A stretch of DNA of 64,000 bases from Pseudomonas aeruginosa PAO1 (GCF_000006765.1 NC_002516.2); one strand, 5' to 3'. Numbered from the stretch's first letter, positions 11,119 through 64,000 are shown. Notes: generated from the letters alone by a model not told the origin. Numbers and translations: made by a program.

Positions 11119-11239
11119 GAGGATATCTCCGTGAGATGGATTGGCTGGATCGCAGGAAGATATTACGCGCATAATATTTATTGAATTACAGTCGAAATAC
11201 AATTTGACCGAAAAAGCCGCAGGACTCGCCGAAACGCCC

Positions 11240-11884
11240 TCAGACTTCGTTCAATTCGCTGATATGCCGATACTCGGCCCCCAGTTCCCGGGCCAGGCGC
11301 TCGGCCTTGCCCAGGCGCAACGGGCCGCTTTCGAGGTCGACCAGCAGGCTCGGGCAGGCAGCCTCCGGCAGCGCCGGCCAGTCGCGCAGACGGCCGTCGG
11401 TAAGCACCAGCAGACGCTGATGCTCGGCGGGTTTCTGCCGCTGTCGGCGCGCCAGCCAGCCAGCGGCCTGGTGCAGGGCGTCGAGCAGCGGCGTACCGCC
11501 GCCGGCGCCCAGCTGGCGCAGCCAGTCCTGCAACTCCCGCGAGGCCTTCTGCCCCTGCCAGAGCCATTGCGCCTGCTGCCCGGTGGCATGCAGCACGGCC
11601 AGGCGGATGCGCTGCCGATAAGCCTCCTCGAACAGCGTCGCCAACACTCCCTTGGCCTGGGCCAGGGCGCCGTACCGGCGGGTGCTGGCGGAGGCATCGA
11701 CGATCACCAGCCAGAGTTCGCCCGGGCGCCGGCTGCGCGGCTGGCGAAGCAGGTCGCGGCGCTGTCGGGGACGTCCGCGCAGCAGGGTCGGCAACCATTG
11801 GATGGCGCCCTCCGCACCCTGGCTCAGGGCGCCGCCAAGTCCGCCGCGCAGGGCTCCGGGTCTGCTCCTGGCATCCGCACCCAT
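11240..11884 (-). CDS. vWA-domain chelatase subunit (ChlD/CobT-like C-terminal part), probably also made as a frameshift fusion
   Basis: MIDAS motif VIVDASAS, GAGGGTPL, VLTDGR. The frame stays open upstream past the slippery site at 11911-11917. Confidence 0.85.
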   Translation of the reverse strand: MGADARSRPGALRGGLGGALSQGAEGAIQWLPTLLRGRPRQRRDLLRQPRSRRPGELWLVIVDASASTRRYGALAQAKGVLATLFEEAYRQRIRLAVLHATGQQAQWLWQGQKASRELQDWLRQLGAGGGTPLLDALHQAAGWLARRQRQKPAEHQRLLVLTDGRLRDWPALPEAACPSLLVDLESGPLRLGKAERLARELGAEYRHISELNEV

Positions 11885-11917
11885 GACCGAGCGCGGGCGG
11901 ATGCTCAGGGCTTTTTT
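11871..11917 (-). other. Candidate -1 programmed ribosomal frameshift signal
   Basis: In-phase A_AAA_AAG (11917-11911), 6-nt spacer, GCATCCGC/GCGGATGC stem (11904-11871). Confidence 0.75.
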
Positions 11918-12921
11918 GGCCAGCGCGGCAGCTCGCGGGCGGTCCCCATGGCCACCGGCCGAGCCGGCAATTCGCCCCACTGCCCTTCGCCGTCGCCGGT
12001 GCGCTCCGGGAGCGCGACAGGGGCCGCCGCGGGCGGTGGCGGTGGATTGGCCGCCGATGGTGGCGGGTTCGACTGGCGACGGCGATGCAGCAGGGCGAAA
12101 TGTTCCACCGCATCGATGTCCTCCGCCTCGATCCGCTCGCCGCCGCGCCAGGCCGCATGGGCGCGCGCCGCGCGCAGCCAGACCAGGTCGGCGCGCAGGC
12201 CATCGACAGCCGCCTCGAAGCAGCGTCGAGCGATGCTGTCCAGCGCCGCATCGTCCAAGGGAATCCGCGCCAGCCGCCGGCGCGCCTCGGCGCAACGGCG
12301 GCGCAGGGTGTCCTGCTGGCCTTCCCAGCGTTCGACGAAGGCCTGCGGGTCGGCATCGAAGGCCAGCCGGCGACGGATGATCTCTGCCCGCTCGGCCGGC
12401 GGCGGCTGGGTGTCGAGACGCACGTTGAGGCCGAAACGGTCGAGCAGTTGCGGGCGCAGTTCGCCCTCTTCCGGGTTCATCGTGCCGATCAGCACGAAAC
12501 GCGCCGGATGCCGGTGGGAAATGCCATCGCGCTCGACCAGGTTGACGCCGCTGGCGGCGACGTCGAGCAACAAGTCCACCAGGTGGTCCGGCAGCAGGTT
12601 CACTTCGTCGACGTAGAGCACGCCGCCGTCGGCCTTGGCCAGCACGCCCGGGGAAAACCGCGCGCGACCTTCGCCGAGGGCGGCGTCCAGGTCGAGGCTG
12701 CCGACGATGCGCTCCTCGCTGGCGCCCAGCGGCAGGGTAACGAACTCGCCCGCCGGCAGCAGTTCGGCGACGCCCCGCGCCAGGGTCGACTTGGCCATTC
12801 CGCGCGGCCCCTCGATCAGTACCCCGCCGATCGCCGGATCGACCGCGGCCAGGCACAGCGCCAGCTTCAGTTCGTCGGCGGCGACCACGGCGGACAGGGG
12901 GTAATGCACGGTAGCGCTCAT
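11905..12921 (-). CDS. AAA+ chelatase ATPase subunit (ChlI/CobS-like)
   Basis: Walker [38 protein letters not shown], Pro-rich tail; 338 aa. Confidence 0.92.
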
Positions 12922-13061
12922 GGGGATTCCTGCGGCGGACGGACGGAAATACGGACCGCCAAGTCTATCAGGCCGGCGGCGCCGGTATCGAACCGTGAAA
13001 CAGTCGTTGAACCGGCCGCCTCGCTTGCAGTAAGCTCGGGACTCGTTCACGGGAGAAACCC

Positions 13062-13193
13062 ATGCCGCACACCCGCCATCCGCACCTGCATTCCAGTGCC
13101 TCGCGCCCTGGCTTGTCGTTGCGCGCGCGTGCGCCGCAGGCACCCCGTGCCGCGTATTTCTTCGGGTATTGGTTTAGCCACTCCGGCGCCTGA
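13062..13193 (+). CDS. Putative aromatic amino-acid leader peptide (43 aa)
   Basis: Translated by hand: [52 protein letters not shown] at 13051-13056. Confidence 0.72.
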
Positions 13194-13240
13194 TACCCCA
13201 ACGGCGCCCACGGTATACGGGACGCCTACCCTGCACACGC

Positions 13241-13279
13241 AAACCCCCGGTCGGCTCCCCGACCGGGGGTTTTGTTTTT
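13241..13279 (+). terminator. Attenuator-type intrinsic terminator upstream of DAHP synthase
   Basis: Perfect 14-bp stem AAACCCCCGGTCGG/CCGACCGGGGGTTT, 4-nt loop, followed by TGTTTTT. Confidence 0.85.
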
Positions 13280-13339: not shown

Positions 13340-13444
13340 ATGACCGCATACCGCTACCGCACTGGCTACCCGCTCAACACCTGGCGATTTAGCGACGGCC
13401 GCCAGCCGCTCGCCAACCCACGACATTGCCGAACACCTCGATAG
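13340..13444 (+). CDS. Second putative leader peptide (34 aa)
   Basis: Translated by hand: MTAYRYRTGYPLNTWRFSDGRQPLANPRHCRTPR. CAGGA RBS upstream. Confidence 0.55.
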   Translation: MTAYRYRTGYPLNTWRFSDGRQPLANPRHCRTPR

Positions 13445-13491
13445 GGCACGACGCGCGCGGGACGCCCGCCGCCAGCCCAGGAAGCCAGACC

Positions 13492-14586
13492 ATGAACTCA
13501 TCCGTATCCGCACTGACCACCCTTTCGCCGAACGTCCAGGCCGTCGCCCTGCCCAGCGCCACCGCCCGTACCGCCCTGGAACGCCTGCCCAGCCCGCTCG
13601 AACTCAAGGCCCGCCAGCCGTTGCCGCTGGAGCTGGCCAGCCAGGTCGCCGCCAGCCGCGACGCCATCCGCGCCATCCTCGACGGCGACGACCCGCGCCT
13701 GCTGGTGGTAGTCGGTCCCTGTTCGATCCACGATCCCCGCTCCGCCCTCGAATACGCCGAACGCCTCGCCGCGCTGAGCGACGAACTCGACGGCCAGTTG
13801 CTCCTGGTGATGCGCGCCTACGTGGAAAAGCCACGCACCACGGTGGGCTGGAAGGGCCTCGCCTACGATCCGCACCTGGATGGCAGCGACGACATGGCCG
13901 CCGGCCTGGCGCTGTCCCGGCAACTGATGCTGGACATGCTGCGCCTCGGCCTGCCGCTGGCCACCGAACTCCTGCAACCGCTGGCCGCCGGCTACTTCGA
14001 CGACCTGCTGAGCTGGGCGGCGATCGGCGCGCGCACCAGCGAATCGCAGATCCACCGCGAGCTGGTCAGCGGCCTCGGCCTGCCGGTGGGCTTCAAGAAC
14101 GGCACCGACGGCGGCGTCGGCATCGCCTGCGACGCGATCCGTTCGGCGGCCCACGGCCACCGCCATTTCGGCCTCGACCCGCACGGTCACCCGGCGCTGA
14201 TCGAGACCCGCGGCAATCCGGACACCCATGTGGTGCTGCGCGGCGGCCGCCACGGTTCGAACTACGGCCCCGAGCAGGTGCAGGCCGTGCGCCAGGCCCT
14301 GGAAAGCCAGGGCATCGCCACGCGGATGATGGTCGATTGCAGTCACGCCAACAGCGGCAAGAACCCGCTGAACCAGCCCGGCGTCCTCGCCAGCGTGCTG
14401 GACCAGCGCCTGGCCGGTGCCAGCGACCTGGTCGGGGTAATGCTGGAAAGCCACCTGTTCGACGGTTGCCAGGCGCTCGGCGGCGAACTGCGCTACGGCG
14501 TCTCGATCACCGACGGCTGCCTCGGCTGGGAAGGCACCGAGCGGATTCTCCGCGACGCCGCCCGGCGGCTCGCCGAGCGGCGCTGA
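13492..14586 (+). CDS. 3-deoxy-7-phosphoheptulonate (DAHP) synthase, type I-alpha
   Basis: VVVGPCSIHD, MRAYVEKPRTTVGWKGL, AIGART, VGFKNGT, MVDCSHANS, SITDGC; AGGAAG RBS; 364 aa. Confidence 0.95.
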   Translation: MNSSVSALTTLSPNVQAVALPSATARTALERLPSPLELKARQPLPLELASQVAASRDAIRAILDGDDPRLLVVVGPCSIHDPRSALEYAERLAALSDELDGQLLLVMRAYVEKPRTTVGWKGLAYDPHLDGSDDMAAGLALSRQLMLDMLRLGLPLATELLQPLAAGYFDDLLSWAAIGARTSESQIHRELVSGLGLPVGFKNGTDGGVGIACDAIRSAAHGHRHFGLDPHGHPALIETRGNPDTHVVLRGGRHGSNYGPEQVQAVRQALESQGIATRMMVDCSHANSGKNPLNQPGVLASVLDQRLAGASDLVGVMLESHLFDGCQALGGELRYGVSITDGCLGWEGTERILRDAARRLAERR

Positions 14587-14614: not shown

Positions 14615-17600
14615 CTATTCCTCTTCGACGTCCAGCAGCAGGTTCTCCAGGGCCTCGCGATAGGCCCCCGGCTCCTGCCAGAGCCCGCGCCGCTGCGCCT
14701 CCACCAGGCGCTCGGCCATGTCGCGCAAGGCTTGCGGATTGTGCTGGCGGACGAACTCGCGGGTCTCCGCGTCGAGCAGGTAGGCGTCGGCCAGCAGCGC
14801 GTACTGGTGGTCGTCGATCAGCTCGCTGGTGGCATCGAAGGCGCACAGGTAGTCCACCGTCGCCGCCAGTTCGAAGGCGCCCTTGTAGCCGTGGCGCTTC
14901 ATCCCGGCGATCCACTTCGGATTCACCGCCCGCGCCCGCACCACCCGGTTGAGTTCTTCCTTGAGCGTGCGGATGCGCGGGTTGTCCGGCTGGCTGTGGT
15001 CGCCGTGGTAACTGGCCACCGGCGCGCCGCGCAGGGTTTCCACCGCCGCCAGCATGCCGCCCTGGAACTGGTAGTAGTCGTTGGAATCGAGCAGGTCGTG
15101 CTCGCGGTTGTCCTGGTTGTGCAGCACCGCCTGCAGGCGTTCCAGGCGCTGGGCGAAGCGTTCCCGCGCCGGCGTGCCGTCGTCGGCGGCACCGTAGGCG
15201 TAGCCGCCCCAGTTCAGGTAGACCTCGGCAAGGTCGGCGCGGGTCTCCCACAGCCGCTCTTCGATTGCGCCCTGCACGCCGGCGCCGTAGGCACCCGGCT
15301 TGGCGCCGAAGATCCGCCAGCCGGCCTGCCGGCGCGCCTCCGCCGGCGCCGTGCCCTGCGCCTCGAGGCGCTGGCGCTCCAGGCGTACGCGAGCGGCCAG
15401 CGGGTTCAGCTCCTCCGCCTCGTCCAGCTCGGCGACCGCCTGCACCGCCGCATCGAACAGGCGGATCAGGTTGGCGAAGGCGTCGCGGAAGAACCCGGAG
15501 ACCCGCAGCGTCACGTCGACCCGCGGGCGGTCCAGCAGGGAGACCGGGAGGATCTCGAAATCGGCGACGCGCTGGCTGCCGGCCTGCCAGACCGGTCGCA
15601 CGCCGAGCAGGGCCAGGGCCTGGGCGATGTCGTCGCCGCCGGTGCGCATGGTCGCCGTGCCCCACACCGAGAGGCCGAGCTGGCGCAGGTGATCGCCATG
15701 TTCCTGCAGGTGACGCTCGAGCAGCAGGTTGGCCGACTGGAAGCCGATGCGCCAGGCGGTCGGGGTCGGCAGGTTGCGCACGTCCACCGAGAAGAAGTTG
15801 CGTCCGGTGGGCAGCACGTCGAGTCGCCCGCGACTCGGCGCGCCGCTCGGACCGGCCGGTACGAAGCGCCCTTCGAGGGCTGCCAGCAGCCCGTCGATCT
15901 CGGCCCCGCCACAGGCGTCCAGGGTCGGTGCCACCTGTTCGCACAAGCCGCGCAACACCTCGCCGCTGGCACGCCAGGTGGCAGGCGGCGATTCGCCGCC
16001 CAGGCAGCGTTCTATCCAGTGCAACGCCAGCAATTCCAGGCGTTCGCGGGTATCCCCGAGAGTACGCCAGGGCTCCCCGCCCCGCTCTTCCAGGCAGGCA
16101 GGCCGCGCGCCCTGCCAGGCCTCGCCCATGTCGCAGGCCAGCGGATCGAAGCCCAGGCCAAGGTCGTCCGCCAGGCTCTTCAGCAACCCGGCGTTGGCGC
16201 CCTTGCCATCGCCGCGCGGAACCCGCAGCAGCGCCAGCAGGGTATCCAGGCGCAATCGCCCGCTCGGCGACTCGCCGAACACATGCAGGCCGTCGCGGAT
16301 CTGCGACTCCTTCAGGTCGCAGAGATAGGCGTCCAGCTGCGGCAGCCAGCTGTCCGGATCGTCGCTGAGCTGCAAGCCGATCTCGCGGTCGAGACGGTTG
16401 TCGCGCAGGAGGACGAGAATCTCGCCGCGCAACTGTTCGGCGCGGCGCGGGTCGAGCAGCGAGGCATCGTAGAACTCGTCGGCCAGGCGCTCCAGGTCGC
16501 GCAGCGGGCCGTAGCTCTCGGCGCGGGTCAGCGGCGGCATCAGGTGGTCGATGATCACCGCCTGGGTGCGGCGCTTGGCCTGGGCGCCCTCCCCCGGATC
16601 GTTGACGATGAACGGATAGATGTTCGGCAGCGGACCGAGCAACGCGTCCGGCCAGCATTCGGCGGACAGGCCGACTCCCTTGCCCGGCAGCCATTCCAGG
16701 TTACCGTGCTTGCCGACGTGCAGCAGGGCATCGGCGCGGTAGGCGTGGCGCAGCCAGAAGTAGAACGCCAGGTAGCCGTGCGGCGGCACCAGGTCGGGAT
16801 CGTGGTAGACCGCCGCCGGATCGAGCTGATAGCCGCGCGCCGGCTGGATGCCGACGAAGGTCAGGCCATAGCGCAGGCCGGCGACCATCATCCGTCCGTC
16901 GCGGAACATCGGGTCCTGTTGCGGCTCGCCCCAGCGCGCCAGCACCGCCTGGCGATTGCGCTCCGGCAGGCGTGCGAAGCAGGCCAGGTAGTCGTCCAGC
17001 GCCAGGCTCTGGGCGCAGGGCCGTAGGTCGAGATGCTCCAGGTCGTTGCTGACGCCGCCGAGCAACTGGCGGATCAGCTCGGTTCCGCTGGCGGGCAGTC
17101 CGTCGACCGGATAGCCCTGCTGGCGCAGGGCACGAAGGATGTTCAGCGCCGCCGCCGGGGTGTCCAGGCCGACGCCATTGCCGATCCGGCCATCGCGGGT
17201 CGGGTAGTTGGCCAGCACCAGCGCCACCCGTTTTTCCGCGTTTGGCTTGCGCGCCAGCTCGGCCCAGCGCCGCGCCAGTTCGGCGACGAAATCCATGCGC
17301 TCGTCGTCGGCGAGATAGCAGACCACGTCGCTCTCGCTGCGTTCGCTGCGCCAGGCCAGGCCCTTGAAACTGATCGGCCGGGTGACGATGCGCCCGTCCA
17401 GCTCCGGCAGCGCCACGTGCATGGCCAGGTCACGCGGCCCCAGGCCTTGCGGGTTGTCCAGCCAGAGCGGGCGGTTGTCCAGCGAGCAGATCGCCTGCAA
17501 TACCGGCACGTCGCGACGGAACGGACGCAACTCGGGCGCCTCCGGATTGGACTGGGCGAAACCGGTGGTATTGACGATCAGCGCGGCGTCGCTGCGCTCC

Positions 17601-18361
17601 AGCCAGTCTTCCACCTGCGCCAGGCAGGCGCTTTCCTTGAGGCTGGCCAGCGCGATCGGCAACGGGTTGAGCCCCTGCGCCGCGAGGCGTTCGCAGAAGC
17701 GTGCGATGAAGGCGGTGTTGGCTGCCTGCAGGTGGGTGCGATAGAACAGCAACGCGACCACCGGACGCCCGGCCTGCCAGTCGGCACGCCAGTGTTCCAG
17801 GGTCGCCTCGGCATGCCGTGGATGGAACAGTGCCACCCGCGGCAGCGCCTGCGGTTCGCGCCAGGCGTAGTCGCGGCCGAGGCACTGGCTGGCCAGGCAG
17901 CGGTAGAACTGCCCGGCGTTCTCCAGGCCGCCCTGGCGCAAGTATTGCCAGAAGCGCTCGGCCTGCTCCGCCGGCAGGTTGCCAAGGGCGCTCAGCTCCG
18001 GGTCGGGGCGGTCGTCGCCGGGCACCGGGATCAGCAGCGCGCCGCGCTCGGCCAGCGCCACCAGTTGCTCCACGCCGTAGCGCCAGTAGCCGATGCCGCC
18101 GTGCAGCGAAAGCAGGATCACCCGCGCGTGCCGCAGCACTTCCTCGACGTAGAGGTCCACCGAGGCGTGGTTCTGCAACTGCATGGGGTTGGCCAGGCGC
18201 AGGCTCGGGTAGTCGTCCGGCAGCGCACGGGCGGCCTCGGCCAGCAATGCGAGGTGCGAATCGCCGCTGCAGAGGATCACCAGCTCGGCGGGAGTCTGGG
18301 CCAGGTGGGCGATGCCGTCGTCGGGAACGAAGCCGCCGGGTTGGGTGCGCAACAGGTGCAT
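14615..18361 (-). CDS. cobN: Cobaltochelatase subunit CobN
   Basis: HVGKHGNLEWLPGK, IDHLMPP, LPTGRNF, NPKWIAGMKRHGYKGA; 1248 aa. Confidence 0.96.
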   Translation of the reverse strand: MHLLRTQPGGFVPDDGIAHLAQTPAELVILCSGDSHLALLAEAARALPDDYPSLRLANPMQLQNHASVDLYVEEVLRHARVILLSLHGGIGYWRYGVEQLVALAERGALLIPVPGDDRPDPELSALGNLPAEQAERFWQYLRQGGLENAGQFYRCLASQCLGRDYAWREPQALPRVALFHPRHAEATLEHWRADWQAGRPVVALLFYRTHLQAANTAFIARFCERLAAQGLNPLPIALASLKESACLAQVEDWLERSDAALIVNTTGFAQSNPEAPELRPFRRDVPVLQAICSLDNRPLWLDNPQGLGPRDLAMHVALPELDGRIVTRPISFKGLAWRSERSESDVVCYLADDERMDFVAELARRWAELARKPNAEKRVALVLANYPTRDGRIGNGVGLDTPAAALNILRALRQQGYPVDGLPASGTELIRQLLGGVSNDLEHLDLRPCAQSLALDDYLACFARLPERNRQAVLARWGEPQQDPMFRDGRMMVAGLRYGLTFVGIQPARGYQLDPAAVYHDPDLVPPHGYLAFYFWLRHAYRADALLHVGKHGNLEWLPGKGVGLSAECWPDALLGPLPNIYPFIVNDPGEGAQAKRRTQAVIIDHLMPPLTRAESYGPLRDLERLADEFYDASLLDPRRAEQLRGEILVLLRDNRLDREIGLQLSDDPDSWLPQLDAYLCDLKESQIRDGLHVFGESPSGRLRLDTLLALLRVPRGDGKGANAGLLKSLADDLGLGFDPLACDMGEAWQGARPACLEERGGEPWRTLGDTRERLELLALHWIERCLGGESPPATWRASGEVLRGLCEQVAPTLDACGGAEIDGLLAALEGRFVPAGPSGAPSRGRLDVLPTGRNFFSVDVRNLPTPTAWRIGFQSANLLLERHLQEHGDHLRQLGLSVWGTATMRTGGDDIAQALALLGVRPVWQAGSQRVADFEILPVSLLDRPRVDVTLRVSGFFRDAFANLIRLFDAAVQAVAELDEAEELNPLAARVRLERQRLEAQGTAPAEARRQAGWRIFGAKPGAYGAGVQGAIEERLWETRADLAEVYLNWGGYAYGAADDGTPARERFAQRLERLQAVLHNQDNREHDLLDSNDYYQFQGGMLAAVETLRGAPVASYHGDHSQPDNPRIRTLKEELNRVVRARAVNPKWIAGMKRHGYKGAFELAATVDYLCAFDATSELIDDHQYALLADAYLLDAETREFVRQHNPQALRDMAERLVEAQRRGLWQEPGAYREALENLLLDVEEE

Positions 18362-18436
18362 GGACGTTCTACCGGTAGGACGCAAGAAGCTGGGGCCGGC
18401 GAATCGCCATCGCCGGCCCCGGCCGGGGATCACGGA

Positions 18437-19489
18437 TCAGGCAAGCGCTGTGCGCAGCTGGTTGGCAATGGCGGCCTGGTCCAGCTCCTGGCCGATCACC
18501 ACCAGCCGGGTGCTGCGGGCTTCGTCGGCCAGCCACTTGCGGTCGAAATGCCTGTCGAAGCGCTTGCCGACGCCCTGTACCAACAGGCGCATGGGCTTGC
18601 CCGGAATGGCGGCGAAACCCTTGATGCGAAGTATGTCGTGACGCTCCACCAGCTCGCCGAGGGCCTCGAGCAGCGCAGCTTCCTCCACCTCGGGGAGATC
18701 GACGTGGAAGGAGTCGAACTCGTCGTGGTCGTGGTCCTCGTGGCCTTCGTGGTCGTGGTGGGTCGGCCGGCCGTCGATGTGCAGCTCGGCCTCGGCGTTG
18801 AGTCCCAGCAAGACCGGCAGCGGCAGCTCGCCCCGGCTCGCCTCGACGATCTTCACCGCCGCCGGCAGCTCCCCGGCGATCTCCGCGCGGACCCGCGCCA
18901 GGGCCTCGGCGTCGAGCTGGTCGGCCTTGTTCAGGATCACCAGGTCGGCACTGGCCAACTGGTCCTCGAACAGTTCGTGCAGCGGCGATTCATGGTCGAG
19001 GTTGGGGTCCTGGCGGCGTTGCTGGTCCACCTGCTCGGGATGGGCGGCGAAGGTACCGGCCGCCACCGCCGGACTGTCGACCACGGTGATCACCGCGTCG
19101 ACCGTGCAGGCGTTGCGGATTTCCGGCCACTGGAAAGCCTGCACCAGCGGCTTGGGCAGGGCCAGGCCGCTGGTCTCGATGAGGATCTGGTCAAGGTCGC
19201 CGCGGCGCGCCACCAGCTCGCGCATCACCGGGAAGAACTCTTCCTGCACGGTGCAGCACAGGCAACCGTTGGCCAGCTCGAAAACGCGGCCCTGCGCCTC
19301 TTCTTCGCTGCAGCCGATGGAACATTGCTTGAGGATCTCGCCGTCGATGCCGAGTTCGCCGAACTCGTTGACGATCACCGCGATGCGCCGGCCTTCGGCG
19401 TTGTCCAGCATGTGCCGGAGCAAGGTGGTCTTGCCGGCGCCGAGGAAGCCGGTGACGATGGTGACGGGGAGTTTCGCCAGGGTTTTCAT
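18437..19489 (-). CDS. cobW: CobW (COG0523 GTPase metallochaperone)
   Basis: TGFLGAGKTT, VNEFGE, GCLCC, IETSGLA, His-rich HHDHEGHEDHDHD; 350 aa. Confidence 0.95.
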   Translation of the reverse strand: MKTLAKLPVTIVTGFLGAGKTTLLRHMLDNAEGRRIAVIVNEFGELGIDGEILKQCSIGCSEEEAQGRVFELANGCLCCTVQEEFFPVMRELVARRGDLDQILIETSGLALPKPLVQAFQWPEIRNACTVDAVITVVDSPAVAAGTFAAHPEQVDQQRRQDPNLDHESPLHELFEDQLASADLVILNKADQLDAEALARVRAEIAGELPAAVKIVEASRGELPLPVLLGLNAEAELHIDGRPTHHDHEGHEDHDHDEFDSFHVDLPEVEEAALLEALGELVERHDILRIKGFAAIPGKPMRLLVQGVGKRFDRHFDRKWLADEARSTRLVVIGQELDQAAIANQLRTALA

Positions 19490-19621
19490 GGGCAGCCCTT
19501 GTTCAGCTCGGCGGGCATGCGGACGAGTGGCGCGGACGCAGGGGCCGCGCAACGGATTCGCCACCGGATCACCCCGCCCGGTTGTATGGAAGTCTTGTCC
19601 CCGGGCATCGCGCCACGGGAT

Positions 19622-19795
19622 CGACGAGGCAGGTCTCCTGGCTCACGGTCTGGCGTCTCCGCCGGTTCCCCGCCTTCCCGCGTCACGCAGTGGCATTGGG
19701 GAACGATCGCCGTTCACAGTTGCGGGGGCAGCCGCGGCATCGACCGCGTTCCCTCTTAGCCCCGCCGTCGCCGGCGAGGAACCTCGAACCGGCAA
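19622..19795 (-). ncRNA. Cobalamin riboswitch (full-length) upstream of cobW-cobN
   Basis: Minus strand AAGAGGGAACGCGGT, CTGCCCCCGCAACTGT, GCCACTG..GGGAAGG and GAGCCAGGAGACCTGCC conserved B12-element blocks. Confidence 0.92.
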
Positions 19796-19865
19796 GGCTA
19801 CGCAGTGCGCGGGCCAGGGTCAATCGGGCCGGTTGACGCCCGGCGGTCCTTCATGCTGTCCTAGG

Positions 19866-20000
19866 CGGGTTGTCCCAGGTGTCTCGTGCCGGCGCGCACG
19901 AGGTGAAACGGGAAGCCGGTGACGCTCTCCGAGCCAGTCCGGCGCTGCCCCCGCAACGGTAAGCGCATCGCGCGCGAGCCCGGAGACCGGCCTGGAACCT
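19866..20000 (+). ncRNA. Cobalamin riboswitch (compact) upstream of cbtB-cbtA-cobE-cobM
   Basis: AGGTG..GAAACGGGAAGCCGGTG, CGCTGCCCCCGCAACGGTAA, GAGCCCGGAGACCGGCC blocks. Confidence 0.88.
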
Positions 20001-20111
20001 TTCGTTTGATTCACCCGCGGTGGGCGGGCGCAAGCGTGAAGCGGGCCGTCCGGGCCTGTTCCTCGTGCGTACTCCTCTGCCACGCCCATGCCAATCCAGA
20101 GGGAACGCACC

Positions 20112-32657: not shown

Positions 32658-32744
32658 GTACTCAAGGACCGCAAGGGTATTCCAAATCTGTTTAAAAAAC
32701 CGCCAGCCCTGTCTGGACGCCCCACGAACATGACCAATACTGAA

Positions 32745-32868
32745 AGGTACTGGCGCGCGGTATCTCCCCCCAAGTACCCAGCCAGTGAAGGTACCGAGGA
32801 ATGCGTACCTTTGTTCCACTCCTAATGGTCTTGACCCGGATTCATCCCCCAGAACCCGGGTTTTTTTT
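32745..32868 (+). ncRNA. rgsA: RgsA (P16) small RNA; 5' end approximate
   Basis: Intergenic position between the PLP enzyme and tatD matches recalled PA2958.1. Hairpins ACTGGC/GCCAGT and AAGGTAC/GTACCTT, terminator ACCCGG..CCGGGT plus T8. Confidence 0.75.
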
Positions 32869-46367: not shown

Positions 46368-46880
46368 GCCGCCATAAGCGGCCTGGCCTGCGGATGATTG
46401 CCAACCTGCATTTCCCCCTCGCCTGCAAACACTTTGAACGGACGTCAGGCCGTCCTACAGAGGCGTTTCAGCGGAAATACGAAAATTTCCAACCCGCTAA
46501 CGACTCGAAACCAAAGCCTTGAAACATGAGCCGCGACCACTTCGGTGAGCGCGAGATGCCAACCCGCTCCGGATACTGCGAGCGGCGCCCGATTCTTAAG
46601 GAACATGTGTAGGGTGGAGATGTACGGCTGTTGGACTGCGTAGCTTCTAGCTTGATCCAGACGCATTTTTCGTCCGCCTCCGACAGCCGATTCCTCCTCC
46701 TGACTCAAGTGCTTCTGAAACACAGGAAGCAGGAGACGTAGTCGCGGACCGGCACCCAGTGCCGAGCGCCGCTGGACACGGGAATGGCCCGCCATTCCTG
46801 AATACGCGCCCGAGCACCGACCGTGAGAGTCGTGTGTGCCGATCGCCGTTTCCGGTAGCCCCGGAAACCATTGGTACTAC
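46368..46880 (+). promoter_or_regulatory. Long structured rne 5' UTR (likely contains the Pseudomonas rne-II motif)
   Basis: About 510 nt without a credible ORF between the promoter and the ATG; long rne leaders are established autoregulatory elements. Confidence 0.6.
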
Positions 46881-62837: not shown

Positions 62838-64000
62838 TCAAAAAAGCCGGTTGAGGCCGTCGAACGCCGCTACCCGATAGGCTTCCGCCATGGTCGGGTA
62901 GTTGAAGGTGGTGTTGACGAAGTACTTCAGGGTATTCAGCTCGCCCGGCTGGTTCATGATCGCCTGGCCGATGTGGACGATTTCCGAAGCCTGGTCGCCG
63001 AAGCAGTGCACGCCGAGGATCTCCAGGGTCTCGCGATGGAACAGGATCTTCAGCATGCCCACCGGCTCGTTGGAAATCTGCGCCCGGGCCATGCCCTTGA
63101 AGAACGCCTTGCCCACTTCGTAGGGAATCTTCGCCGCGGTCAGTTCGCTTTCGTTCTTGCCGATCGAGCTGATCTCCGGAATGGTGTAGATGCCGGTCGG
63201 CACATCGTTGACGAAGCGCCAGCTGTCGCTCTCGACGATGTTGCCGGCGGCCGAGCGGCCCTGGTCGTAGGCAGCGCTGGCCAGGCTCGGCCAGCCGATC
63301 ACGTCGCCAGCGGCGAAGATGTTGCTCACCGAAGTGCGGTAGTTCTCGTCCACCTCGATCTGGCCACGGCTGTTGACCTTGATGCCGACGTTCTCCAGGC
63401 CGAGCTTGTCGGTGTTGCCGGTCCGGCCGTTGCACCAGAGCAGCGCGTCCGCCTTGATCTTCTTGCCCGACTTCAGGTGCAGGATGACACCGTTGTCCAG
63501 CCCCTCGACGCGCTCGTACTCCTCGTTGTGGCGGATCAGCACGTTGTTGTTGCGCAGGTGGTAGCTCAGCGCATCGGAAATCTCGTCATCGAGGAAGCTG
63601 AGCAACTGGTCGCGCGTATCGATCAGGTCCACCAGCACGCCCAGGCCGCTGAAGATCGACGCGTATTCGCAGCCGATCACCCCGGCTCCGTAGATGATCA
63701 GCCGGCGCGGGGTGTGGCTCAGGGACAGGATGGTGTCGCTGTCGTAGACCCGCGGGTGGTTGAAATTGATGTCCGAAGGACGATACGGGCGCGAGCCGGT
63801 GGCGATCACGAACTGGTCGGCGACCAGGCGCTCCACCGCGCCGCTCGGCGTCACCACTTCGACGGTGCGTTCGTCGACGAAGCTGGCGGTGCCGGTGAAC
63901 ATGTCGATGCGATTGCGCGCGTAGTAGCCGGTACGCGAAGCGACCTGCTTGGAGATCACCCGGTCGGCGCTCTTCAGCACGTCGGGGAAGGAGAACCAGC
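62838..64000 (-). CDS. sthA: Soluble pyridine nucleotide transhydrogenase (5' end outside window)
   Basis: [39 protein letters not shown]. Confidence 0.95.

What the first reader, a model, noticed from the sequence alone, without database searches (positions are those of the whole stretch)
11240..12921. -1 programmed frameshift would make two cobalt-chelatase subunits from one gene
The ChlI-like ORF ends CCA AAA AAG CCC TGA, placing the dnaX-type heptamer A_AAA_AAG in the correct phase. Six nt downstream is a GCATCCGC/GCGGATGC hairpin. The -1 frame is open and runs into the vWA domain. Predicted products are a 338-aa AAA+ subunit and a 560-aa AAA+/Pro-linker/vWA ChlD-like fusion, the pair CobN needs. 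I recall frameshifted chlD genes being reported as a class, so this is probably not new, but standard annotation splits it into two genes.
Basis: partly seen in the sequence, partly recalled or inferred. Interest (0 to 1): 0.68.

Follow-up and report, generated by a model that had tools for sequence, protein, structure and literature searches.

The report
Known frameshifted cobalt-chelatase gene (fs-chlD)

Summary
On the minus strand, a 338-aa ChlI-like AAA+ ORF (12921-11905) ends CCA_AAA_AAG_CCC_TGA. The heptamer A_AAA_AAG (11917-11911) is in the shift-prone phase. An 8-bp hairpin starts 6 nt downstream. The -1 frame runs 223 more codons into a vWA domain, giving a 560-aa product.

Comparative evidence supports a programmed -1 frameshift:
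- All 25 same-genus genomes and all 42 named Pseudomonas-group loci keep the in-phase heptamer one codon before the stop.
- This is the most conserved 30-nt stretch of the gene.
- The hairpin shows compensatory changes.
- Third-codon-position variability moves from frame 0 to frame -1 at the site.
- No start codon is conserved ahead of the vWA domain. The ATG at 11884 occurs only in P. aeruginosa.
- The nearest complete genome has cobN but no cobS, cobT or second chlI.
- Its only tRNA-Lys genes carry anticodon UUU, the condition known to favour slippage in E. coli.

This is the published fs-chlD class (Antonov 2013, 2020; Kuznetsov 2022, which names P. aeruginosa). Verdict: real, correctly interpreted, not novel.

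The parts
11905..12921 (-). Zero-frame ORF: ChlI-like AAA+ ATPase plus Pro-rich linker, 338 aa. This is the small chelatase subunit.
   Evidence: Translation. Pfam AAA_5, AAA_lid_2 and Mg_chelatase. TIGR02030 BchI-ChlI E 2e-99. PDB ChlI/BchI E 2e-81.
11911..11917 (-). Slippery heptamer A_AAA_AAG in the phase CCA AAA AAG
   Evidence: Invariant and in phase in 25/25 same-genus genomes and 42/42 named Pseudomonas-group loci.
11905..11907 (-). Zero-frame stop TGA, one codon after the heptamer
   Evidence: The position is conserved while its identity varies (TGA, TAG, TAA) in relatives.
11871..11904 (-). Stimulatory hairpin. Arms at 11897-11904 and 11871-11878, 18-nt loop, 6-nt spacer after the heptamer.
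   Evidence: Local fold -25.4 kcal/mol, z -3.3. On 44 sequences, 84% of cells pair against 32-55% when slid. Seven of 13 pairs show double changes, and one pair reads CG 27 / UA 10 / UG 4.
11240..11911 (-). -1 frame extension: 223 codons plus stop. The vWA domain is at about 11393-11710, with metal-binding motif DASAS. Together with residues 1-337 it gives the 560-aa ChlD-like medium subunit.
   Evidence: Pfam VWA_2. TIGR02442 positions 458-639 and TIGR02031 positions 412-531. BchD vWA 2x31_A E 4.5e-7. The peptide is conserved from the slip site onward. Codon-phase switch.
11882..11884 (-). Lineage-specific ATG in the hairpin loop. It is a possible start for a 214-aa vWA-only protein and has no Shine-Dalgarno sequence.
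   Evidence: Present only in the window and the nearest genome. Absent in 23 other species of the genus.
14615..18433 (-). cobN, the large cobaltochelatase subunit that needs the two smaller subunits
   Evidence: Pfam CobN-Mg_chel, 1323.8 bits.
18437..19801 (-). cobW (18437-19564), preceded by a cobalamin riboswitch (19611-19801), upstream of cobN
   Evidence: Pfam cobW and CobW_C. Rfam RF00174, 109.5 bits.

Best explanation
This is the frameshifted chlD gene (fs-chlD) of Pseudomonas aeruginosa.

Ribosomes that read straight through stop at TGA and release a 338-aa ChlI-like AAA+ ATPase, the small subunit. A fraction of ribosomes pause with tRNA-Lys(UUU) on AAA and AAG in the P and A sites, held up by the hairpin 6 nt downstream. 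They slip back one base onto AAA AAA. They then continue in the -1 frame through about 70 linker residues into a vWA domain, giving a 560-aa ChlD-like medium subunit.

The two products share residues 1-337. Together they form the ATP-driven motor and adaptor that serves CobN in cobalt insertion on the aerobic B12 route.

Shown here: the signal, its conservation, covariation in the hairpin, the change of coding frame at the site, the lack of any other small or medium subunit gene in the nearest complete genome, and the tRNA-Lys repertoire.

Inferred, not shown: that the 560-aa protein is made, at what efficiency, and that both products assemble with CobN.
For: 1. Signal anatomy is as described.
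2. The in-phase heptamer, with a stop one codon later, is kept in 25/25 same-genus genomes at only 76-79% DNA identity and in 42/42 named Pseudomonas-group loci.
3. The slip region is the most conserved 30-nt window of the gene, 27/30 invariant against a 48% mean. It holds the longest invariant run, 14 nt, although it lies in the variable linker.
4. Nucleotide diversity peaks at codon position 3 of frame 0 upstream of the site. Downstream it peaks at position 3 of frame -1, including the stretch before any candidate start.
5. The -1 peptide is conserved from the first codon after the site.
6. No start codon is conserved. In 32 of 42 loci there is no ATG before the metal-binding motif. The commonest candidate is a GTG three codons before that motif. 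Only 8 candidate codons, scattered over 7 loci at differing positions, have an SD-like motif upstream.
7. The hairpin covaries: 84% of cells pair, 7 of 13 pairs carry double changes, and 0 of 500 shuffles reach the observed score. In other families, unrelated sequences also form hairpins starting about 6 nt after their slippery runs.
8. The two halves map collinearly onto single-protein models TIGR02442 and TIGR02031. Natural single-ORF homologues of 542-698 aa exist.
9. The nearest complete genome (99% identical at this locus) has no CobT, no CobS_N and no second ChlI. The next-best AAA+ hits are MoxR-type.
10. All 63 of its tRNA genes were typed. The only tRNA-Lys genes are two with anticodon UUU and none with CUU.
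11. RNA-seq assemblies from three studies each give one contig covering just the two ORFs, about 11194-12938, with A6 unchanged.
12. Literature: reporter assays on three members of this cluster gave 10-63% frameshifting (PMC3711429). P. aeruginosa is listed as an fs-chlD organism (PMC9227772).
Against:
- The three published reporter cassettes had runs of 7-11 A, not A_AAA_AAG. The 2020 paper, which may cover this signal, could not be read.
- No Shine-Dalgarno-like stimulator is visible upstream of the heptamer (sequences).
- Minimum-free-energy z-scores for the hairpin are near zero in longer contexts. RNAalifold's own consensus is weak.
- P. aeruginosa itself has an ATG 21 nt after the stop that could in principle allow reinitiation.
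- Each half, and a fused singleton variant, score below the curated NCBIfam cut-offs.
- The RNA data are contigs, which cannot exclude a minority of slipped transcripts.
Confidence: 0.85

Rival explanations
1. Two separate genes. The vWA protein starts on its own at ATG 11884, by reinitiation after the TGA 21 nt upstream or by direct initiation. It works as a free vWA partner of the AAA+ protein, as in MoxR-vWA pairs.
For: The ATG at 11884-11882 is in frame with the vWA ORF and lies close to the ORF1 stop. Gene callers mostly report ORF1 as a separate 338-aa protein, in a cluster of 914 members. MoxR-type AAA+ proteins with separate vWA partners are an established architecture.
Against: The ATG occurs only in P. 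aeruginosa and is absent in 23 of 23 other species of the genus. In 32 of 42 named relatives there is no ATG before the metal-binding motif, and two of them have only a GTG three codons before it. The 16 nt upstream of the ATG hold no Shine-Dalgarno sequence. The ATG sits inside the hairpin loop. This model does not explain the invariant heptamer, the covarying hairpin, or the coding signal in the -1 frame upstream of any start.
Confidence: 0.07
2. Transcriptional slippage. RNA polymerase adds one A in the A6 run, and the edited mRNA encodes the same 560-aa fusion with no ribosomal frameshift.
For: An extra A gives exactly the same protein. Relatives in other families carry runs of 9-10 A, long enough for polymerase slippage. 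The published efficiencies rose with run length.
Against: Six A's is shorter than the runs usually needed, by established knowledge of slippage at 8-9 or more A/T. The G at position 7 is invariant. The downstream hairpin at a 6-nt spacing is conserved and covaries, which suits a ribosomal mechanism. Four RNA-seq assemblies show A6 with no indel, though contigs drop rare variants.
Confidence: 0.05
3. A decayed or mis-sequenced chlD gene, with the frame break being a mutation or assembly error.
For: Rare P. aeruginosa assemblies hold fused ORFs of 548-560 aa, all clusters of 1-3 sequences. They differ by indels in the linker or in the A run.
Against: The same break at the same codon is kept across 67 genomes of many species, with both frames under coding constraint. 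The split form is the norm, with 914 sequences in its cluster. Nothing else in the nearest genome could supply the small subunit.
Confidence: 0.02

Closest known systems
fs-chlD genes: frameshifted chlD of cobalamin producers (Antonov et al. 2013 NAR, PMC3711429; Antonov 2020 Mol Biol Evol; Kuznetsov et al. 2022, PMC9227772)
   Same: The architecture is the same: a ChlI-like AAA+ ORF, a slippery A-rich site just before its stop, and a -1 frame running into the ChlD vWA part. The genome context is the same: cobN present, no separate small subunit gene. The genus is listed in 2013 and the species in 2022.
   Different: Nothing essential differs. The signal here is A_AAA_AAG plus a hairpin, whereas the three cassettes tested in 2013 had runs of 7, 9 and 11 A. 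Whether this exact signal has been assayed could not be checked because the 2020 paper is not held.
Escherichia coli dnaX -1 programmed frameshift (tau/gamma)
   Same: Identical heptamer A_AAA_AAG in the same phase. A stem-loop follows about 6 nt downstream. The organism has only tRNA-Lys(UUU), so AAG is read by wobble. Two products share an N-terminus and enter one AAA+ assembly.
   Different: No upstream Shine-Dalgarno-like stimulator is seen here. In dnaX the shifted product is the shorter one; here it is the longer one.
CobS/CobT of the classical CobNST cobaltochelatase
   Same: Same roles: an AAA+ motor and a vWA adaptor serving CobN.
   Different: CobS and CobT are two separate genes of different sequence families. 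Neither CobS_N nor CobT is found in the nearest genome. CobT has no ChlI-like AAA+ domain identical to its partner's.
BchI/BchD (ChlI/ChlD) of magnesium chelatase
   Same: The closest sequence relatives. The N part matches ChlI/BchI at E 2e-81, and the C part matches the BchD vWA domain.
   Different: Those are two genes, and D has its own, diverged AAA+-like domain. Here both products carry the same AAA+ module with a Walker A box (GPRGMAKS). The partner is CobN, not BchH/ChlH.

Membership tests
fs-chlD (frameshifted chlD) | ChlI-like AAA+ ORF that stops before a vWA/ChlD C-terminal part lying in another frame | tested here: met
fs-chlD (frameshifted chlD) | In-phase slippery site just upstream of the ORF1 stop, conserved in orthologues | tested here: met
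   25/25 and 42/42 loci.
fs-chlD (frameshifted chlD) | Downstream RNA structure as stimulator | tested here: met
   Covariation and local fold. Weak by RNAalifold.
fs-chlD (frameshifted chlD) | Genome has cobN but no separate small (chlI/cobS) or medium (cobT) subunit gene | tested here: met
   Tested in the nearest complete genome G001, not in the window's own assembly, which is not held. cobN is in the window.
fs-chlD (frameshifted chlD) | Frameshift product actually made | not testable with these tools
   Only literature reporters for other members, at 10-63%.
dnaX-type -1 PRF signal | X_XXY_YYZ heptamer in phase, with the A-site Lys codon read by tRNA-Lys(UUU) only | tested here: met
   All 63 tRNAs typed: two Lys-UUU, no Lys-CUU.
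dnaX-type -1 PRF signal | Upstream Shine-Dalgarno-like stimulator about 10 nt before the heptamer | tested here: not met
   No GGAG- or AGGA-like element is visible in the upstream flank shown for window or orthologue sequences. Read by eye, not scanned.
NCBIfam TIGR02442 putative cobaltochelatase / TIGR02031 BchD-ChlD (equivalogs) | Whole-protein score above the curated cut-off | tested here: not met
   N part 401.7 and C part 75.1 bits against cut-off 779.45. For TIGR02031, 238.7 and 62.5 bits against 499.55. A fused variant scored 454.7. The matches are collinear but sub-threshold, so this is a diverged subfamily.
CobS/CobT | Match to the CobS_N or CobT Pfam families | tested here: not met
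   No such match in the gene or in the nearest genome.

The most novel reading that the evidence does not exclude
In P. aeruginosa alone, the hairpin loop has acquired an AUG (11884). The locus might therefore yield a third product, a 214-aa vWA-only protein made by termination-reinitiation, alongside the 338-aa and 560-aa forms. Alternatively, the AUG and hairpin together might tune the ratio of subunits in a species-specific way.
Probability: 0.08. Interest if true: 0.4.

Novelty: already known. Interest (0 to 1): 0.15.

Why it matters
The mechanism supplies two subunits of an essential B12-pathway enzyme from one gene, in a ratio set by the frameshift. Standard gene calling splits the gene into an 'ATPase' and a 'hypothetical vWA protein', which misleads pathway reconstruction. 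All of this is already in the literature for this gene class and this species. The value of the finding is correct annotation of this locus, not discovery. The covariation, tRNA-Lys and start-codon analyses done here add supporting detail, but they may duplicate the 2020 paper, which could not be read.

Tried and rejected
No earlier notes were used.
- Antonov 2020 is not held. The supplements of the 2013 paper held no hit for 'chelatase' or 'aeruginosa'.
- Papers found for PA2941/PA2942 say nothing about the frameshift.
- Hairpin folding energy in contexts of 61-111 nt is no better than shuffles, so it was not used as evidence. RNAalifold's own consensus recovered only four core pairs at about zero energy.
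- The promoter scan found nothing upstream of the gene. A 'terminator-like' hit on the plus strand at 11889-11906 is just the mirror image of the A run and hairpin, and no plus-strand gene ends there.
- All sequencing runs offered were contigs, not raw reads. They could not measure A6 against A7 transcripts or transcript ends.
- The fused 548-560-aa proteins from a few P. aeruginosa assemblies were considered as evidence for a natural in-frame form. They were rejected as clusters of 1-3 sequences carrying indels.
- The two weak AAA+ paralogues in the nearest genome were checked and are MoxR-type, not ChlI.
- No structure or complex prediction was run, because no claim depends on one.
- One unpublished genome (G182, locus L097) was among the 301 sampled. 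It counts only in the 22-of-301 tally, and no other claim rests on it.

Full report
**What is in the sequence.**
The feature lies on the minus strand.
- An ORF starts at ATG 12921 and ends at TGA 11907-11905. It encodes 338 aa ending ...RWPKKP.
- Its last codons are CCA AAA AAG CCC TGA. The heptamer A_AAA_AAG (11917-11911) therefore sits in the X_XXY_YYZ phase.
- Six nucleotides after the heptamer, GCATCCGC (11904-11897) can pair with GCGGATGC (11878-11871) across an 18-nt loop.
- The -1 frame is open from the site to a stop at 11240.
- A ribosome slipping back one base on AAA AAG would read ...WPKK then ALSIRPR... for 223 more codons. The fusion is 560 aa.

**What the two parts are.**
- ORF1 carries AAA+ domains of the ChlI type (Pfam AAA_5, AAA_lid_2, Mg_chelatase). 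It matches solved ChlI/BchI structures at E 2e-81.
- The -1 part carries a vWA domain. Its only match among solved structures is the vWA domain of BchD, 2x31_A, at E 4.5e-7.
- Against NCBIfam the two parts fall collinearly on single-protein models. On TIGR02442 'putative cobaltochelatase', the N part covers positions up to 317 and the C part covers 458-639. On TIGR02031 BchD-ChlD the ranges are 1-293 and 412-531. All scores are below the curated cut-offs, so this is a diverged branch of the family.
- Neighbours fit the role. cobN lies at 14615-18433, preceded by cobW and a cobalamin riboswitch. On the other strand a second riboswitch precedes cbtA and a corrin methylase.
- The closest named protein-database matches (99% identity) are from Pseudomonas aeruginosa.

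**Is the signal more than chance?**
- The bare heptamer is not rare: 10 copies in the window against 1.5 expected. Several of the others sit in terminator-like contexts. Only this copy is in the shift-prone phase at the end of a long ORF with a long open -1 frame.
- Hairpin energy is significant only in a tight 46-nt window (-25.4 kcal/mol, z -3.3). It is not significant in longer GC-rich contexts.

The decisive evidence is comparative.
- In 25 of 25 genomes of the same genus, at 76-79% DNA identity, the string TGG-CCA-AAA-AAG-xxx-stop is kept (one genome reads TCA for CCA), followed by the hairpin arms.
- In 42 of 42 named Pseudomonas and Ectopseudomonas loci the in-phase heptamer sits one codon before the stop. 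The stop itself varies among TGA, TAG and TAA.
- Across 22 species, the 30-nt window around the site is the most conserved of the whole gene: 27 of 30 columns invariant against a 48% mean. It holds the longest invariant run, 14 nt, although it lies in the poorly conserved linker.

**The hairpin is supported by covariation.**
On an alignment of 44 distinct sequences:
- 84% of cells form standard pairs, against 32-55% when the 3' arm is slid by 1-3 columns.
- Seven of 13 pairs show changes on both sides.
- One pair reads C-G in 27 sequences, U-A in 10 and U-G in 4.
- No shuffle out of 500 reached the observed covariation score.

In the fluorescens-type sequences the stem extends to 13 bp. Homologues from other families have unrelated sequences that also fold into hairpins starting about 6 nt after their slippery runs. 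RNAalifold's own consensus on the same alignment was weak, and a few sequences with shorter loops are misaligned. I therefore weight the named-structure count more than the de novo prediction.

**The reading frame changes at the site.**
- Upstream, nucleotide diversity is highest at the third position of frame 0.
- From 41 to 160 nt downstream, before any plausible start codon, it is highest at the third position of frame -1 (0.23 against 0.12 and 0.15).
- The -1 peptide is conserved from its first residue.
- No start codon is conserved ahead of the vWA domain. The ATG at 11884 is found only in the window and the nearest genome, and 23 other species of the genus lack it.
- Among 42 named relatives, 32 have no ATG before the metal-binding DxSxS motif. 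The commonest candidate is a GTG three codons before that motif. Two species have nothing else. Only 8 candidate codons, scattered over 7 loci at differing positions, have an SD-like motif upstream.

The vWA domain therefore cannot generally be expressed on its own.

**Why the cell needs it, and why the site is slippery.**
- The window's own assembly is not held. The nearest complete genome is 99% identical at this locus by DNA, and its ORF1 protein is 100% identical. It has no match to CobT or CobS_N and no second ChlI.
- The next-best AAA+ hits in that genome are MoxR-type AAA_3 proteins. CobN therefore has no other source of small and medium subunits.
- All 63 tRNA genes of that genome were typed. 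Lysine is served by two genes with anticodon UUU and none with CUU.
- By established work on E. coli dnaX, that condition makes A_AAA_AAG highly shift-prone. This link rests on my knowledge and was not tested here.

**Transcripts.**
In RNA-seq assemblies from three separate studies, one contig covers just the two ORFs (11194-12930, 11229-12935, 11218-12938). Its depth differs from that of the flanking contigs, and it has no indel in the A run. This fits one transcription unit carrying A6. Contigs cannot show transcript ends or rare slipped forms.

**Wider distribution.**
In a sample of 301 genomes of the class, 22 carry a homologue. They fall into three kinds:
- split genes with runs of 6-10 A just before the stop and a -1 extension of 210-248 aa containing DxSxS;
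- fused single ORFs of 542-668 aa;
- classical bchI-bchD pairs.

Among the named loci, Burkholderiales use A_AAA_AAA and Ectothiorhodospira uses A_AAA_AAG. Actinobacteria are mostly fused, and one Corynebacterium shows a +1 arrangement. This reproduces the published picture.

**Comparison with the literature.**
- Antonov et al. 2013 (PMC3711429) defined a magnesium-chelatase cluster of 23 frameshifted genes from six genera, including Pseudomonas. They measured 10-63% frameshifting for three cassettes in E. coli.
It is cited but is not held.
- Kuznetsov et al. 2022 (PMC9227772) list Pseudomonas aeruginosa as an example of 'stage 8', where fs-chlD supplies both subunits of the aerobic cobalt chelatase.
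- Two 2026 preprints on CobST suggest that the active motor is a CobS hexamer with a CobT vWA domain in its pore. If the same holds here, the frameshift need not approach 50%. This is inference only.

**Rivals.**
- Independent initiation or reinitiation at ATG 11884 is possible only in P. aeruginosa. It explains none of the conserved features. I give it 0.07.
- Transcriptional slippage would give the same protein. Six A's is a short run, the G is invariant, and the spaced, covarying hairpin points to the ribosome. I give it 0.05. It may well contribute in relatives with 9-10 A.
- A broken gene is excluded by conservation. The few fused ORFs in P. aeruginosa assemblies are clusters of 1-3 sequences with indels.

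**Verdict.**
The finding is already known for this gene class and this species. Interest is low. The only loose thread is the species-specific AUG in the hairpin loop.

Noticed in passing
window 13151-13272 (+): Pseudomonas sRNA P15 (Rfam, 104.7 bits) ends in a strong terminator-like hairpin at 13241-13272. It lies directly upstream of a DAHP synthase gene (13426-14586, +), so it looks like a leader or attenuator for that gene. The gene sits, oddly, between cobN and the chelatase gene on the opposite strand.
   Followed up: no
window 19611-19801 (-) and 19860-20009 (+): Two divergent cobalamin riboswitches lie back to back. One leads into cobW-cobN. The other leads into a CbtA cobalt-transporter gene and a corrin methylase. 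The frameshifted chelatase gene itself has no riboswitch.
   Followed up: partly
window 32663-32859 (+) and 46603-46870 (+): RgsA sRNA and the rne-II 5' UTR element, both well above the Rfam gathering scores.
   Followed up: no
window 11882-11884 (-): An ATG in the hairpin loop is specific to P. aeruginosa. In other Pseudomonas the loop reads ...CCCGGCCCCAGGC... with no start codon.
   Followed up: partly
proteins P0005, P0006, P0010, P0012 (P. aeruginosa assemblies): Rare fused ORFs of 548-560 aa arise from one or two single-base indels in the Pro-rich linker or the A run. All are clusters of 1-3 sequences, against 914 sequences for the split form. They are probably sequencing errors or sporadic mutants.
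   Followed up: partly
L115 (OZ240079.1, titled Leclercia tamurae, 7.1 Mb chromosome): This record carries a Pseudomonas fluorescens-type copy of the gene, 74% identical and with the fluorescens-type hairpin. Its size is also unusual for Leclercia, so it may be mislabelled or mixed.
   Followed up: no
L167 (Corynebacterium xerosis) and L182 (Actinomycetota MAG): L167 has the vWA part in the +1 frame after ...CCC TTT CGC GGC TAG. L182 has a 251-aa -1 extension with no A run near the stop. These may be other kinds of recoding signal in the same gene family.
   Followed up: no
L096 (G065, a genome of about 0.4 Mb): A very small, AT-rich genome keeps a fused 575-aa homologue of this chelatase subunit.
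   Followed up: no
window 62840-62846 (+): Another AAAAAAG where one 340-codon open frame ends four codons later and a different frame stays open to the window's end. This is probably an ordinary gene boundary in GC-rich DNA.
   Followed up: no
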